NCBI RefSeq assembly: GCF_001194135.2
Contig: NC_068998.1
Coordinates: 32,009,279-32,041,667, forward strand
Source of the DNA: Octopus bimaculoides
Lineage: Eukaryota
Direction: 5' to 3'
DNA length: 32,389 nt
Each line of letters begins with the position of its first letter. The stretch's first letter is position 1. The notes below the pieces were generated by a model that searched no databases, was not told the DNA's origin, and saw only the letters and a list, made by a program, of their open reading frames with translations. Shown here in pieces: positions 8,046-25,490 of the stretch. The position numbers and the translations under genes were made by a program.

Positions 8046-9451
8046 TGAACTATGATGAGGTGTTGGAATTTGTGCAACTCTGTATATCATCAAAGTGAGA
8101 TAAAAGTCTGGACAAAAGGATGTATTCTACCTTTCCCCAAAAAAGGGGATCTGGGCCTTGCAATAAACTACACAGGAATTACATTAATACCAGTTGCAGC
8201 AAAGGTTTACAATGCATTTCTACTCAATCGAATCCAACCTCAAATTGAAAGAGTTCTTAGGAAAAATCAAAATGGATTCAGGAGGAGCTGCTCTACATCT
8301 GGTCAAATTCTCACAGTTAGGAGGACGTTAGAAGGAGTACAAGCCAAAAACCATAACGCAGTTCTGTTCTTTGTTAATTTCTCCAAGGCCTTTGACTCTG
8401 TACACAGGGATAAGGTGGCAGAAATCCTTAGAGCATATGGAATCCTTGATGAAACAATAAAGGCAGTAATGATGCTGTATAAAAACATCCGAGTGAAAGT
8501 GCAGTCACCAGACAGAGATACTGACTTCTTCGATGTTTGTGCAGGAGTACTGCAGGGTGACACACTAGCTCCTTGCTTGTTCATCTTGTGCCTCAATTAT
8601 GTATTGCATACCTCAGTAGTTCAACACAATGTTCTGGGTTTCACTTTACAGAAGTCTAGAAGCAGAAGATATCTGTTCACCAACTAGACTGACGCCAATT
8701 ATGCTGATGACATAGCGCTCTTCACATGCAACACAAAAAAATGCTGAACATTTACTCCATCTCCTGGAAAATGCAGCTGCTAACATTGGGCTCTATGTAA
8801 ATGAAAAGAAGACAGAGTTTATCACCCTGAACACAACAAGTGAAATCAAGACCATCAAACAAAAGCCCTTGAAAAATGTCAACAAGTTTACTTATCTAGG
8901 CAGCAATATCACATCCACTGAAAAATATATTAAATCTCATATTGCTAAGACTTGGGCAGCTATAGACAGTCTTAGGACAATATGGAAGTCAATGCTACCA
9001 GATAAATTGAAGAGACAGTTCTTCAGAGCAGTTGTTGAATCTGTGCTTGTATAGGGATCTCTGACTTGGACTCTCAACCAAGAAACTCAGGTGCATGCTG
9101 GATGGTGCCTACACCAGAATGTTATGTGCAGTTCTCAAAGTCTCTTGGAGGGAGCACCCAACAAAACAACGATTATATGGGAATGTACTAACTTTCTCAT
9201 CAACCATCCAAGAGCAGAGATTGAGGTTTGCTGGCCACTACTGGAGAAGTAAAGAAGAACTTGTGAGTAATGTGTTGCTGTGGACACCAAATCCTGGTAC
9301 CACAGCTGCTGGAAGGCCATGGAAGATGTATACACAACGGCTTGCAGAAGATGTTGGATGCCAAATTGAAGACCTAAAAGCACTAATGGAAGATCGGAGT
9401 GATGGAGAGAGGTAGTCAGGCTGGCCAGGGCAATCAGCCTGACTGGATGAT
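8046..9451 (+). pseudogene. RTE-clade LINE, RT domain to 3' end, decayed
   Basis: PFPKKGDL, NYTGITL, NQNGFR, NFSKAFDSV, GVLQGDTLAP, YADD (8700-8711), FTYLGS, RLRFAGH, GRP motifs, with several stops and frameshifts. Short tgatg tail near 9447-9451. Confidence 0.95.
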
Positions 9452-12122: not shown

Positions 12123-12810
12123 GTACTATATCACATTATATCATTATATTATGTGTGTGTATGCACACATATATATTATATCTATATATATAAATTATAT
12201 ATATATCATATGCACATATCATATATATTTATATATATCATGTATATAAAATACACACACACACATTATCTCTACAATTGTAAAAGCAAAAATGAAATAA
12301 AAACAGATATATAATACTGAAATGAATAACATTTTTAAATGCTTTGAAGATGACCTGTAACATTGAATATATTAAATTCTAGGAATTTACTGTTTCACCA
12401 TTGACAGATAACAGTCAATAAAGAAAATATAATGAATGAAATTAATAAATATTTTATATTAAAATCTTATGCCTAAATAGATGAATAAAGCTTGTAAATA
12501 TGTCTGCTCTTATTACTGCCAAACAGTGAAAGTTTCAGACAATCTCATAGCTCAAATGTTGTTTACAAATAATTGCAGATATTTATTAGACATTGGCATA
12601 TGGTAATTTTGGACATTTTCCAAATCTGACGTCCTGTTAATTACTTTCTCATATATCTCTCTAATTATTGTTTTTGCTAATAACTTTGCATCAACTTATA
12701 CTGTTTAAAGCAAGATCTATCAGATGTGAAAGATATTTGGAGCAAACATTGACATACACATACATGAAGAATCATGAACATGTATATATATATATATATA
12801 TACATACATA

Positions 12811-13505
12811 TATCATCTCATCTAGGTCGTCCCATAGGACACCCCAAGACTGTTTCCACATGTTTTCCCCATTCATCTTGATCTTCCATAATGGTCCTCG
12901 CCGCTTGTAACCCTTTCATACCAGTATCCTCCAGCAAGTAGTCAATATAGGTCATTTTCTTCCTTCCTCTCTTGGTTCTTCCTTCCGTTGGTTGCCAGAG
13001 CACTAGTTTGTTAGTAATTTCATCGGTGTGTCTGATGCAGTGTCCACCTAGCCTCATCCTTCCAAGCTGTATCTTCAATGTTACTTTTGGTAGTCCCTGA
13101 TATAAGTCGGTGTTTGTTGTATGACTCTTACAGGAGACATTGAGTCCATTCTAAGCATCCAACTGCTTCTTCAATGCTCTAGTGAACATCCATGTTTCAG
13201 CTCCGTATAGAAGAACAGACTCCACTATTGCCAGAAACAACCTAATTTTCAATTTCCTTGCTAACTTTGAACTCCATACCTTTATAAATGTATGGCATGT
13301 ACTCCAGGCAAGAGCTTTGTTTGCTATGATGTCTTTTTCAGTACTTTGTGTACATGCACCAAGGAATTTTGTAAATTTTCTACTACCTTCAGTGACTAAC
13401 TGTCTCTCACTTTCACTGACACAGGCATTTCGTGGTTGAATGCTTGCAGCTCTGTTTTGTTTGCCTTACAGTACAATCGTACCTTTCCCAATTCCTGCTC
13501 TAATC
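12811..13505 (-). pseudogene. RTE LINE, post-YADD region to 3' end
   Basis: EQELGKVRLYCKANKTE...FLGA...STEKDI...KALAW...ESVLLYGAETW...RMRLGGHC...RGRKKMTYID...PR*, followed by a gatgagatgat tail. Confidence 0.9.
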
Positions 13506-14257
13506 AAAATGGATTCAGATCAGGATGGTCAACAACATCTCACATTGTTGCACTTAGAAGACTGATAGAGGGAGTTAAGAGCGGTGAGCTGGCAGAATCG
13601 TCAGCATGCCGGGCGAAATGCTTAGCGGTATATTGTCTGCCATTACGTTCTGAGTTCAAATTCTGATGAGGTTGACTTTGCCTTTCATCCTTTTGGGGGT
13701 CAATAAATTAAGTACCAGTTACGCACTGGGGTCGATTTAATCGACTTAATTGCTTTGTCTGTCCTGGTTTGTCTCCTCTATGTTTAGCCCCTTGTGGGCA
13801 ATAAAGAAATAAGAGGGAGTTAAGAGCCATAACACCAAGGCTATCATTATCTATGTCGATTTAAAAAAAAAGCTTTTGATTCAATACTGAAAGGAATGAT
13901 GATGAAGATACTTAAAGCATATGAGATTCCACCAAGAATTCTGAGAGCAATAAGTAAGCTGTATGAGAACACCAGAGTGAAAGTGATCACACCTGATGGA
14001 GAGACGGAATACTTTGGAATCAAAGCTGGAGTATTACAAGGTGACATGCTAGCACCTTATCTCTTCACCATCCTTCTGGACTATGAAATGTGTAGAACGT
14101 TTGAGGGCAAGGATGAAGAACTGGGAGTCAAACTGCATAGGCAAAGAAGTAGACGGCATCAAGCAGTAACAGTAACTGACCTAGACTATGCTGATGACCT
14201 GGCATTACTAACAGAGAGGACAGATCAGGCACAGGAGGTGCTGATCAGATTAAAGCA
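13502..14257 (+). pseudogene. RT core of the same RTE element, inverted and split by a SINE
   Basis: NQNGFRSGWSTTSHIVALRRLIEGVKS[SINE]HNTKAIIIYVD..KAFDS...GVLQGDMLAP...DYADDLALLTERTDQAQEVLIRL. Confidence 0.9.
13583..13811 (+). mobile_element. tRNA-derived SINE, family B, with perfect 16-bp TSD
   Basis: Head ggtgagctggcagaatcg, B box gttctgagttcaaattc, central gactttgcctttcatcctt..ggggtcaataaa. AGAGGGAGTTAAGAGC at 13567-13582 and 13812-13827. Confidence 0.95.
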
Positions 14258-14261
14258 TACA

Positions 14262-14283
14262 TGTGTGTGTGTGTGTGCGCGCG

Positions 14284-14337
<54 letters not shown>

Positions 14338-14352
14338 CGTGCATGTGTGTGT
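14262..14352. repeat. (TG)n with (CG)n inserts (alternating purine-pyrimidine tract)
   Basis: Direct reading. Confidence 0.9.
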
Positions 14353-14745
14353 GTGTATGTACATACACACACACAGATACATACATTGCACACATACACC
14401 TTTATGTGTATGTGTGCATGTATATATACTTGTCATTTGTAGAGACAAACATTCACTTAGTCAGCTCTTTCTGAAAAATTTCCATTTTGCATTTAGTGTG
14501 CAATTTCCGGTTTGAAAATAATCATATTTGTCATCATTGTGATTGCAATGATTATGATACAAATATGCTGATGACAATCCTAATAAAGATGATGACACTC
14601 ATCATCATTACAATAAAAACACTCATCAAGATGCTCATAATCTTCAGTACCCTGCAATAAGTGTTGAGCTATCATAATAAGCAGGCATACTCTTCTCTTC
14701 CTATCAGTCTTGTGTTGTGTATACATGTGTATTTATGTACATACA

Positions 14746-16200: not shown

Positions 16201-16330
16201 NNNNNNNNNNNNNNNNNNNNNNNNNNNNNNNNNNNNNNNNNNNNNNNNNNNNNNNNNNNNNNNNNNNNNNNNNNNNNNNNNNNNNNNNNNNNNNNNNNNN
16301 NNNNNNNNNNNNNNNNNNNNNNNNNNNNNN

Positions 16331-25285: not shown

Positions 25286-25287
25286 TT

Positions 25288-25490
25288 GCGCTGGCAAAAT
25301 AATTAGCATGCTGGGTGAAATGCTTAATGGAATTTCATCCATCTTTACATTCTGAGTTCAAATTCCTCGTCTGTCATTACGTTCTGAGTTCAAATTCTGC
25401 CAAGGTCAACTTTGCCGTTCCTCCTTTCATGATGTAATCGACTAGTCACCTCCCCACAAAATGTCAGGCCTTGTGCCTTTATTAGGAAAG
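25288..25490 (+). mobile_element. Family B SINE with duplicated B-box segment
   Basis: gctggcaaaataattagcatgctggg head. ttac(a/g)ttctgagttcaaattc at 25345-25365 and 25377-25397. Confidence 0.85.

What the first reader, a model, noticed from the sequence alone, without database searches (positions are those of the whole stretch)
12811..14257. RTE LINE with twin-priming geometry
Seen: the RT core (NQNGF to QAQEVLIRL) is on the plus strand at 13502-14257. The immediately following coding sequence (EQELGKVRLYCKANKTE to the 3' tail) is on the minus strand at 13505-12811. The two parts overlap by about 10 nt of element sequence (GATTAAAGCA at 14248-14257 vs GATTAGAGCA, minus 13505-13496). The inversion junction shares a 4-5 nt microhomology ((T)AATC, 13501-13505). 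CATACAT (12803-12809 and 14256-14262) is a weak TSD candidate. Established: this layout is the hallmark of twin priming described for mammalian L1, and to my knowledge it is little documented for RTE elements.
Basis: partly seen in the sequence, partly recalled or inferred. Interest (0 to 1): 0.8.

Follow-up and report, generated by a model that had tools for sequence, protein, structure and literature searches.

The report
Twin-primed (5'-inverted) RTE LINE copy in octopus
A dead copy of an octopus RTE-type jumping gene has its front half flipped relative to its back half, in the pattern that "twin priming" leaves in mammalian L1 elements; this extends a known insertion mechanism to another element clade and host but is not a new kind of biology.

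Summary
Window 13502-14257 (+) encodes the N-terminal half of a LINE reverse transcriptase. It is interrupted by a later SINE insertion at 13583-13811. Window 13505-12811 (-) encodes the directly following C-terminal half, through the stop codon and a short microsatellite-like tail.

A collinear copy in Octopus sinensis and intact family copies in public read sets fix the breakpoints to the base:
- The two halves overlap by 10 nt of element sequence, GATTA(A/G)AGCA.
- They are joined 5'-end to 5'-end through a 4-nt microhomology, AATC (13502-13505).
- The outer end of the inverted half shares 2 nt (CA) with a 7-nt candidate target-site duplication, CATACAT.

Zero-mismatch contigs at single-copy depth from two other samples span the inversion junction, so it is not an assembly error.

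Twin priming during one retrotransposition event is the best explanation (about 0.85). The target-site duplication is weak because the flanks are low-complexity, and no empty site could be recovered. Assignment to the RTE clade is well supported but was not tested by phylogeny.

At least three more 5'-to-5' inversion joints were seen in other copies of this family. Novelty: a new member of a known kind. Interest is modest.

The parts
12803..12809 (.). Left copy of the candidate 7-nt target-site duplication, CATACAT. It lies inside a (TA)n(CATA)n microsatellite.
   Evidence: Read directly from the sequence. Chance estimate is 0.9-4.3%.
12810..12815 (-). Degenerate microsatellite-like 3' tail of the element (sense ...GATGATAT). 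The exact element/flank boundary is ambiguous within this stretch.
   Evidence: Family contigs diverge from this locus before 12813-12820. Many carry an (AGAT)n tail instead. The L001 tail differs after CCTAGATGAGA.
12811..13505 (-). 3' segment of the RTE copy in sense orientation on the minus strand. It covers the RT C-terminal half (LEQELGKVRLY...GRPR*), the stop codon and the tail. It carries several frameshifts and stops.
   Evidence: It aligns to L001 6161-6867 at 85% identity. Family contigs continue beyond 13505 as TGCTCAGCAC, the reverse complement of GTGCTGAGCA.
13502..13505 (.). Inversion junction. The 4 nt AATC/GATT are shared by the 5' ends of both segments (microhomology).
   Evidence: Zero-mismatch contigs at single-copy depth span it in X2 (13417-13531) and X3 (13445-13531).
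13502..13582 (+). Inverted 5' segment, part 1 (NQNGFRSGWSTTSHIVALRRLIEGVKS).
   Evidence: Family copies continue upstream as ...GACAAACAATTGCAACCA|AATCAAAATGG, which this locus lacks.
13583..13811 (+). Later SINE insertion into the inverted segment. It is flanked by a 16-nt TSD, AGAGGGAGTTAAGAGC (13567-13582 and 13812-13827). It is not part of the twin-priming event.
   Evidence: Sequence. Its depth is 10^5-10^6 against 20-50 for single-copy DNA. Other RTE copies read straight across the site. Related copies lie elsewhere in the window.
13828..14257 (+). Inverted 5' segment, part 2 (HNTKAIIIYVD...YADDLALLTERTDQAQEVLIRLK). It has one frameshift, in an A-run.
   Evidence: Together with part 1 it aligns to L001 5667-6170 at 89.5% identity.
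14248..14257 (+). Ten nt of element sequence, GATTAAAGCA, present twice. The second copy is GATTAGAGCA on the minus strand at 13505-13496. This is the duplication at the switch point.
14256..14262 (.). Right copy of the candidate TSD, CATACAT. Its first two bases (CA, 14256-14257) are also element sequence, giving a 2-nt microhomology at the internal priming site. A (TG)n microsatellite follows.

Best explanation
This is one retrotransposition event of an octopus RTE-clade LINE that was resolved by twin priming. All steps below are inferred. What is shown directly is the arrangement of the segments and the base-exact junctions. The steps are described in the element's sense orientation, which is the window minus strand.

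1. The element endonuclease nicked the window plus strand in a compound microsatellite, ...TATATA CATACAT^GTGTG... That 3' end primed reverse transcription on the microsatellite-like 3' tail of the RTE RNA. The product is cDNA 1, now 12811-13505.

2. The other strand was cut 7 nt away. Its 3' end (...ATGTATG-3') annealed through its last two bases to a CA inside the same RNA (...GAUUAGAG-CA-GGAAU...). It primed cDNA 2, which ran about 510 nt further towards the RNA 5' end. This is now 14257 back to 13502, ignoring the later SINE.

3. cDNA 1 ran 10 nt past the internal priming site, which produced the 10-nt duplication.

4. After RNA removal, the 3' ends of the two cDNAs (...AATC-3' and ...GATT-3') paired through 4 nt, were filled in and were ligated. 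This created the 5'-to-5' inversion junction.

Later events were a SINE insertion into the inverted half and point and frameshift mutations that killed the copy.
For: - Geometry and 10-nt overlap relative to a collinear relative and to protein homologues.
- Both breakpoints are fixed to the base by intact family copies in read-derived contigs.
- A 4-nt microhomology lies at the inversion junction, and 2 nt at the flank/inverted-segment junction.
- No RTE sequence lies beyond 14257, and no non-element bases lie at 13502-13505.
- The 3' segment keeps its stop codon and tail, while the + segment has no 3' end of its own.
- The junction is present at single-copy depth with 0 mismatches in two independently sequenced samples.
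- The candidate 7-nt TSD is within the 7-15 nt range reported for RTE-clade elements (PMC6007223).
- Microhomologies of 2-5 nt are typical of 5'-inverted L1 (PMC2912911).
- Other copies of this family also show 5'-to-5' joints.
Against: - The TSD is only 7 nt and lies in low-complexity DNA, with a chance level of about 1-4%.
- 1-3 unassigned bases (ATA) lie between the TSD and the recognisable tail.
- No empty site was recovered. Contigs of the two organisms that carry the left flank break at the microsatellites.
- A TSD would also survive a post-insertion inversion, so it does not discriminate between the two readings.
- Only short-read contigs support the junction. No long reads were available.
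- The one experimental comparison found 5' inversions almost only with human L1 in human cells, and argued that overhangs of about 5 nt are too short for second priming (PMC4245944).
Confidence: 0.85

Rival explanations
1. Post-insertion inversion. An ordinary 5'-truncated RTE copy (NQNGF to the tail, all on the minus strand) later had its 5' 511 nt inverted by a two-break rearrangement or a replication template switch.
For: The end product has the same order of segments. Microhomology at breakpoints is also typical of end-joining or replication-based rearrangements. The flanks are microsatellites, which are fragile.
Against: One breakpoint would have to fall exactly at the element/flank boundary. 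No host base lies inside the inverted block, and no element base is left outside it. A simple two-break inversion does not create the 10-nt duplication. Several other copies show the same 5'-to-5' polarity, against one 3'-to-3' joint.
Confidence: 0.08
2. Two independent events. A 5'-truncated RTE insertion on the minus strand sits next to an unrelated RTE fragment on the plus strand, through nested or adjacent insertion or a DNA-level capture.
For: RTE copies are abundant. Depth is tens to hundreds of times single-copy, and a second RTE-like copy lies 4 kb away.
Against: The + fragment has no 3' end or tail, which target-primed insertion requires. Its 3' limit coincides to within 10 nt with the 5' limit of the other fragment, in an element whose ORF alone exceeds 3 kb. 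The two abut with no spacer.
Confidence: 0.04
3. Assembly artefact. The inversion is a mis-join of two repeat copies in the reference assembly.
For: The element is repetitive, and the assembly has gaps elsewhere in the window.
Against: Contigs built independently from two other samples' reads cover 13417-13531 and 13445-13531 with 0 mismatches at single-copy depth (41 and 56). The nearest N-run is at 16201.
Confidence: 0.03

Closest known systems
5'-inverted (twin-primed) mammalian LINE-1 insertions (Ostertag and Kazazian 2001; characterised in PMC2912911 and PMC4245944)
   Same: - The upstream segment is inverted and joined 5'-to-5' to a 3' segment that keeps its tail.
- There is a small duplication at the switch point.
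- Microhomology is present at the inversion junction (4 nt) and at the internal priming site (2 nt).
- Candidate TSDs flank the whole composite.
   Different: - The element belongs to the RTE type, not L1: no poly(A), a microsatellite-like tail and an almost absent 3' UTR.
- The host is a cephalopod mollusc.
- The candidate TSD is 7 nt, whereas 5'-inverted L1 copies typically have 10-20 nt (PMC4245944).
Octopus RTE LINEs (RTE-2_OV of O. vulgaris and the RTE consensus of O. bimaculoides, PMC9115989; RTE families in PMC13282606)
   Same: Same genus-level host, and an element with AP-type endonuclease plus RT, of the clade reported as recently active in octopus.
   Different: This copy is dead, 5'-truncated and rearranged. 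It is about 85-90% identical to an O. sinensis copy.
The single 5'-inverted Nimb-2_DR (zebrafish, non-L1) insert obtained in chicken DT40 cells (PMC4245944)
   Same: A 5' inversion produced by a LINE outside the L1 clade.
   Different: That was an experimental de novo insert of a different clade. The case here is a fixed genomic copy of an RTE-type element.

Membership tests
Twin-primed (5'-inverted) LINE insertion | Two segments of one element lie in opposite orientation. The 3' segment keeps the element's 3' end, and the inverted segment lacks one. | tested here: met
Twin-primed (5'-inverted) LINE insertion | The inverted segment is the sequence directly upstream of the 3' segment, with only a small deletion or duplication at the switch point. 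| tested here: met
   A 10-nt duplication, at L001 6161-6170. Family contigs confirm it.
Twin-primed (5'-inverted) LINE insertion | Polarity: the 5' ends of both segments meet at the inversion junction, usually with microhomology, and the 3'-most base of the inverted segment abuts the flank. | tested here: met
   AATC is shared at 13502-13505, and 14257 abuts the flank.
Twin-primed (5'-inverted) LINE insertion | Microhomology between the target 3' overhang (the end of the TSD) and the internal priming site. | tested here: inconclusive
   Only 2 nt (CA, 14256-14257) are shared. This is consistent but too short to be significant alone.
Twin-primed (5'-inverted) LINE insertion | A target-site duplication flanks the whole composite. 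| tested here: inconclusive
   CATACAT, 7 nt, in low-complexity flanks. Chance is 0.9-4.3%.
Twin-primed (5'-inverted) LINE insertion | An empty (pre-integration) site shows that nothing but the element was added. | not testable with these tools
   The left flank is present in organisms D (about 99% identical) and E (about 96%), but their contigs stop at the microsatellites. No assemblies of sister species could be searched.
RTE clade of non-LTR retrotransposons | LINE-type reverse transcriptase. | tested here: met
   RVT_1, E 7e-18. 1746 homologues, all with RVT_1.
RTE clade of non-LTR retrotransposons | An AP-type (EEP) endonuclease lies N-terminal to the RT in full-length members. | tested here: met
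   The region upstream of the RT in the collinear O. sinensis copy has homologues annotated PF03372 or PF14529, one of them named 'Craniofacial development protein 2-like' by UniRef. Direct Pfam and PDB scans of the decayed sequence were negative.
RTE clade of non-LTR retrotransposons | A very short 3' UTR ending in short tandem repeats, with no poly(A). | tested here: met
   The TGA stop lies about 10 nt from the element end. The tail is GATGATAT here and (AGAT)n in many copies.
RTE clade of non-LTR retrotransposons | A single ORF (no ORF1), and phylogenetic placement of the RT within the RTE clade. | not tested
   No reference set of classified LINE RTs was available. The literature shows that RTE, Dong-R4, CR1, L1-Tx1, Hero and R2 all occur in octopus (PMC13282606).

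The most novel reading that the evidence does not exclude
Twin priming may be a regular outcome of retrotransposition for octopus RTE elements, not a one-off, and it may operate with short (about 7 nt) target overhangs and only 2 nt of priming microhomology. That would contradict two proposals: that 5' inversion depends on L1-specific features or human host factors, and that it needs overhangs of 10 nt or more (PMC4245944). It would also make 5' inversion a general property of AP-endonuclease LINEs.
Probability: 0.4. Interest if true: 0.5.

Novelty: new member of a known kind. Interest (0 to 1): 0.35.

Why it matters
Twin priming is the textbook explanation for the roughly 30% of human and chimpanzee L1 insertions that are 5'-inverted (PMC2912911). 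Experimental work found such inversions almost only with human L1 in human cells, and concluded that they depend on the LINE species and the host (PMC4245944).

A base-exact example in an RTE-type element of a mollusc, together with hints of further examples in the same family, shows that the second-strand 3' end can prime on an internal RNA site in a very different LINE and host. It also appears to do so with a short overhang. This gives a concrete starting point for a genome-wide census of inversion frequency, overhang length and microhomology in RTE elements.

The finding has no bearing on host gene function. The copy is dead and, as far as was examined, not within a gene.

Tried and rejected
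Shorter stretches were used instead.
- Search for the empty site or a shared insertion. Organisms D and E carry the left flank, but their contigs end at the (TA)n and (TG)n repeats. No junction-spanning contig was listed for D, E, F or a low-coverage run of organism A. Presence or absence in sister taxa therefore stays open.
- Pfam and PDB sequence scans of the endonuclease region of L001 found nothing. A homology search was needed to show that it is EEP-type.
- The supplements of the octopus RTE paper do not contain the element sequence.
- Ostertag and Kazazian 2001 and Ichiyanagi and Okada 2008 are not held in the library. The latter may contain data on 5' inversions in RTE-clade elements that I could not check.
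- A tblastn extension of the + strand frame upstream of 13502 (13400-13501) is spurious, at about 20% identity.
- ARAGORN and Rfam found nothing real in the SINE or the flanks. The sub-threshold miRNA hits are microsatellite artefacts.

Full report
**What is in the sequence**

The window is octopus DNA. The best named protein hit is from Octopus sinensis, and public runs of one coded species hold 55-65% of the region's words.

On the plus strand, 13502-13582 translates to NQNGFRSGWSTTSHIVALRRLIEGVKS. After an interruption, 13828-14257 translates to HNTKAIIIYVD(frameshift)FKKAFDS...YADDLALLTERTDQAQEVLIRLK. On the minus strand, 13503 downwards gives LEQELGKVRLYCKANKTELQAFNH... Across a few frameshifts and stops it continues to ...WQPTEGRTKRGRKKMTYIDYLLEDTG...GCPMGRPR*.

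The joined conceptual protein matches Pfam RVT_1 (E 7e-18). It also matches 1746 database proteins that read straight through the join.

**Exact geometry**

Three independent references fix the breakpoints.

1. Protein coordinates. With P0001, the + part covers residues 233-402 and the - part residues 400-631. With the O. sinensis protein P0055, the + part covers residues 1-57 and the - part residues 55-266.

2. A collinear, nearly full-length copy in O. sinensis (locus L001). The + part with the SINE removed aligns end to end to L001 5667-6170 at 89.5% identity. The reverse-complemented - part aligns to L001 6161-6867 at 85.0%. The two alignments share exactly L001 6161-6170. Side by side, L001 reads ...GTGCTGAGCAGATTAGAGCAGGAATCAGGG... 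The window + strand reads ...GTGCTGATCAGATTAAAGCA|TACATGTGTG. The window - strand reads ...CCATTTT|GATTAGAGCAGGAATTGGG.

3. Read-derived contigs of other family copies in the same species.
   - They continue from 14257 as GGAATCGGGGAAGGTAGGATTGTACTGTAA, which maps to revcomp 13495-13466.
   - They continue past 13505 as TGCTCAGCAC, the reverse complement of GTGCTGAGCA.
   - They continue upstream of 13502 as ...GACAAACAATTGCAACCA.

Three conclusions follow:
- The 10-nt overlap GATTA(A/G)AGCA (14248-14257 and 13505-13496) is real.
- The two segments are joined 5'-end to 5'-end.
- Only AATC (13502-13505) is shared at the join.

The 3' end of the family lies at about 12813-12816 and is followed by a variable tail. 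The tail is GATGATAT here, GATAAGAT... in L001 and (AGAT)n in many other copies.

**Is the junction real?**

Contigs assembled independently from two other samples cover 13417-13531 (depth 41) and 13445-13531 (depth 56). Both have no mismatch and sit at the single-copy depth of those runs. The nearest assembly gap is at 16201. An assembly artefact is therefore unlikely.

**What kind of element**

In L001, the RT is preceded by decayed ORFs carrying AP-endonuclease-like motifs. Direct Pfam and PDB scans of that region found nothing. Its database homologues, however, are annotated PF03372 or PF14529, and one O. vulgaris protein is named 'Craniofacial development protein 2-like' by UniRef.

The stop codon lies about 10 nt from the end of the element. 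The tail is a short tandem repeat, and there is no poly(A). From established knowledge of the clade (Malik and Eickbush 1998, recalled rather than checked here), a near-absent 3' UTR ending in short repeats is the RTE hallmark.

RTE elements are known in octopus and have been proposed to be active there (PMC9115989; PMC13282606). I did not place the RT in a phylogeny, so the RTE assignment is well supported but not formally proven.

**Flanks and TSD**

The composite sits between a (TA)n(CATA)2 repeat on the left and a long (TG)n repeat on the right. CATACAT occurs at 12803-12809 and 14256-14262, and the match cannot be extended.

A shared 7-mer or longer within 15 nt on each side occurs at 0.9% of arbitrary position pairs with this spacing. 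It occurs in 4.3% of random pairs of low-complexity flanks from this window. The TSD is thus plausible but weak. RTE-clade TSDs are reported as mostly 7-15 nt with a peak at 10-12 (PMC6007223; PMC4245944).

The first two bases of the right copy (CA) are also element sequence, and 1-3 bases (ATA) separate the left copy from the recognisable tail.

The TSD does not discriminate between twin priming and a later inversion confined to the element, because both would keep it.

**Mechanism**

The layout is what twin priming predicts (model as summarised in PMC2912911, and PMC4245944). The steps below are inferred:

1. First-strand synthesis started from the nicked + strand at ...CATACAT-3', on the RNA tail. 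This produced 12811-13505.
2. The second-strand 3' end (...ATGTATG-3') annealed by its terminal TG to an internal CA of the same RNA. It primed the second cDNA, now 14257 back to 13502.
3. The first cDNA overran the internal priming site by 10 nt, which gave the duplication.
4. The two cDNA 3' ends (...AATC-3' and ...GATT-3') paired over 4 nt and were filled in.

Microhomologies of 2-5 nt at the 5' junction, and similar ones at the inversion junction, are the norm for 5'-inverted L1 (PMC2912911). What is shown directly is the geometry and the junction sequences. The order of events is inference.

**Rivals**

- **Post-insertion inversion.** One breakpoint would have to coincide to the base with the element's 5' truncation point, and this reading does not explain the 10-nt duplication.
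- **Two independent insertions.** These would require a + fragment with no 3' end, whose limit happens to match the other fragment's limit within 10 nt, with no spacer between them.
- **Assembly error.** This is contradicted by the independent contigs.

I put twin priming at about 0.85.

**Recurrence**

While laying contigs of several octopus species on the - segment, I saw further opposite-strand joints in other copies of the family:
- 13105|13369 in organisms C and F (contigs of 712 and 661 nt, at single-copy depth), and 13099|13369 in organism A.
- 13106|13501 in two runs of organism A.
- A contig of organism E that leaves the antisense strand at 13446 and continues in sense at about 13979 of the + segment.

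Where the contig pieces were listed, the joint is of the 5'-to-5' type, with the inverted piece lying upstream in the element, as in twin priming. One joint of the opposite (3'-to-3') type, 12863|12957, was seen in organisms B and C.

The numbers are too small for statistics. Two of the joints also share nearly the same breakpoint (13105 and 13106), so they may not be independent. They do suggest that the window's copy is not unique.

**Literature**

In the searchable library, no paper connects twin priming with RTE or BovB insertions beyond citing the original L1 paper. The one cross-LINE experiment found 5' inversions only with human L1 in human cells, plus one Nimb-2_DR insert. It found none with ZfL2-1, and proposed that short overhangs cannot support second priming (PMC4245944). 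Ichiyanagi and Okada 2008, which analysed RTE-clade junctions, is not held and may contain relevant data.

**Verdict**

This is a known mechanism seen in a new element clade and host: a new member of a known kind. It is a neat, base-exact example and a reasonable seed for a census, but a single dead copy is of modest interest (0.35).

Noticed in passing
window 13583-13811 (TSD 13567-13582 and 13812-13827): A 229-nt SINE-like element is inserted into the inverted RTE segment, with a perfect 16-nt TSD (AGAGGGAGTTAAGAGC) and an A-rich 3' end. It is extremely abundant: word depth is 10^5-10^6 against 20-50 for single-copy DNA. Diverged copies lie at about 2772, 21054, 25287-25427 and 30890 in the window. 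ARAGORN and Rfam find no tRNA or other known RNA head.
   Followed up: partly
window 8061-9436 (+): A second RTE-like RT copy. It is collinear (not inverted), about 35-50% identical in protein to the same database homologues and about 70% identical in DNA over short stretches to the studied copy. It therefore belongs to a different, older family.
   Followed up: partly
read-derived contigs laid on window 12816-13578 (organisms A, C, E, F): Other copies of the same RTE family carry opposite-strand joints of the 5'-to-5' type: 13105|13369 (C, F; 13099|13369 in A), 13106|13501 (A, two runs) and 13446|~13979 (E). Two of them share nearly the same breakpoint, so they may be related loci or mark a preferred stop site.
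   Followed up: partly
contigs of organisms B and C laid on window 12863/12957: One opposite-strand joint of the other polarity (3'-to-3', 12863|12957) is shared by two species. Twin priming does not explain it, and its origin is unknown.
   Followed up: no
window 12813-12847: In each run of the source species, about 10-15 contigs match only the last 33-35 nt of the RTE (12813-12845 or 12847) and then diverge into heterogeneous sequence. They could be very short 5'-truncated copies with a preferred truncation point, or a non-autonomous element that borrows the RTE 3' end.
   Followed up: no
window 12813-12826 and family contigs: Many family copies end in CCTAGAT followed by an (AGAT)n tetranucleotide tail, whereas this copy has GAGATGATAT. 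The stop codon lies inside the terminal repeat region, so the 3' UTR is practically absent.
   Followed up: partly
window 12396-12782 (left flank): The unique left flank is about 99% identical in coded organism D and about 96% identical in organism E. It is not found at 85% or better in organisms B and C. D and E are therefore the taxa in which an empty or filled orthologous site should be sought.
   Followed up: partly
window 13145/13146 and 13863-13871: Relative to the family majority, this copy lacks a G after 13145 and has an expanded A-run in the + segment. Both shift the reading frame. Together with several stop codons, they show that the copy is non-functional.
   Followed up: yes
window 14259-14400 and 12756-12830: Sub-threshold Rfam hits (mir-466, mir-297, SCARNA2 and others) fall entirely on (TG)n and (TA)n microsatellites and are artefacts of low complexity.
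   Followed up: yes
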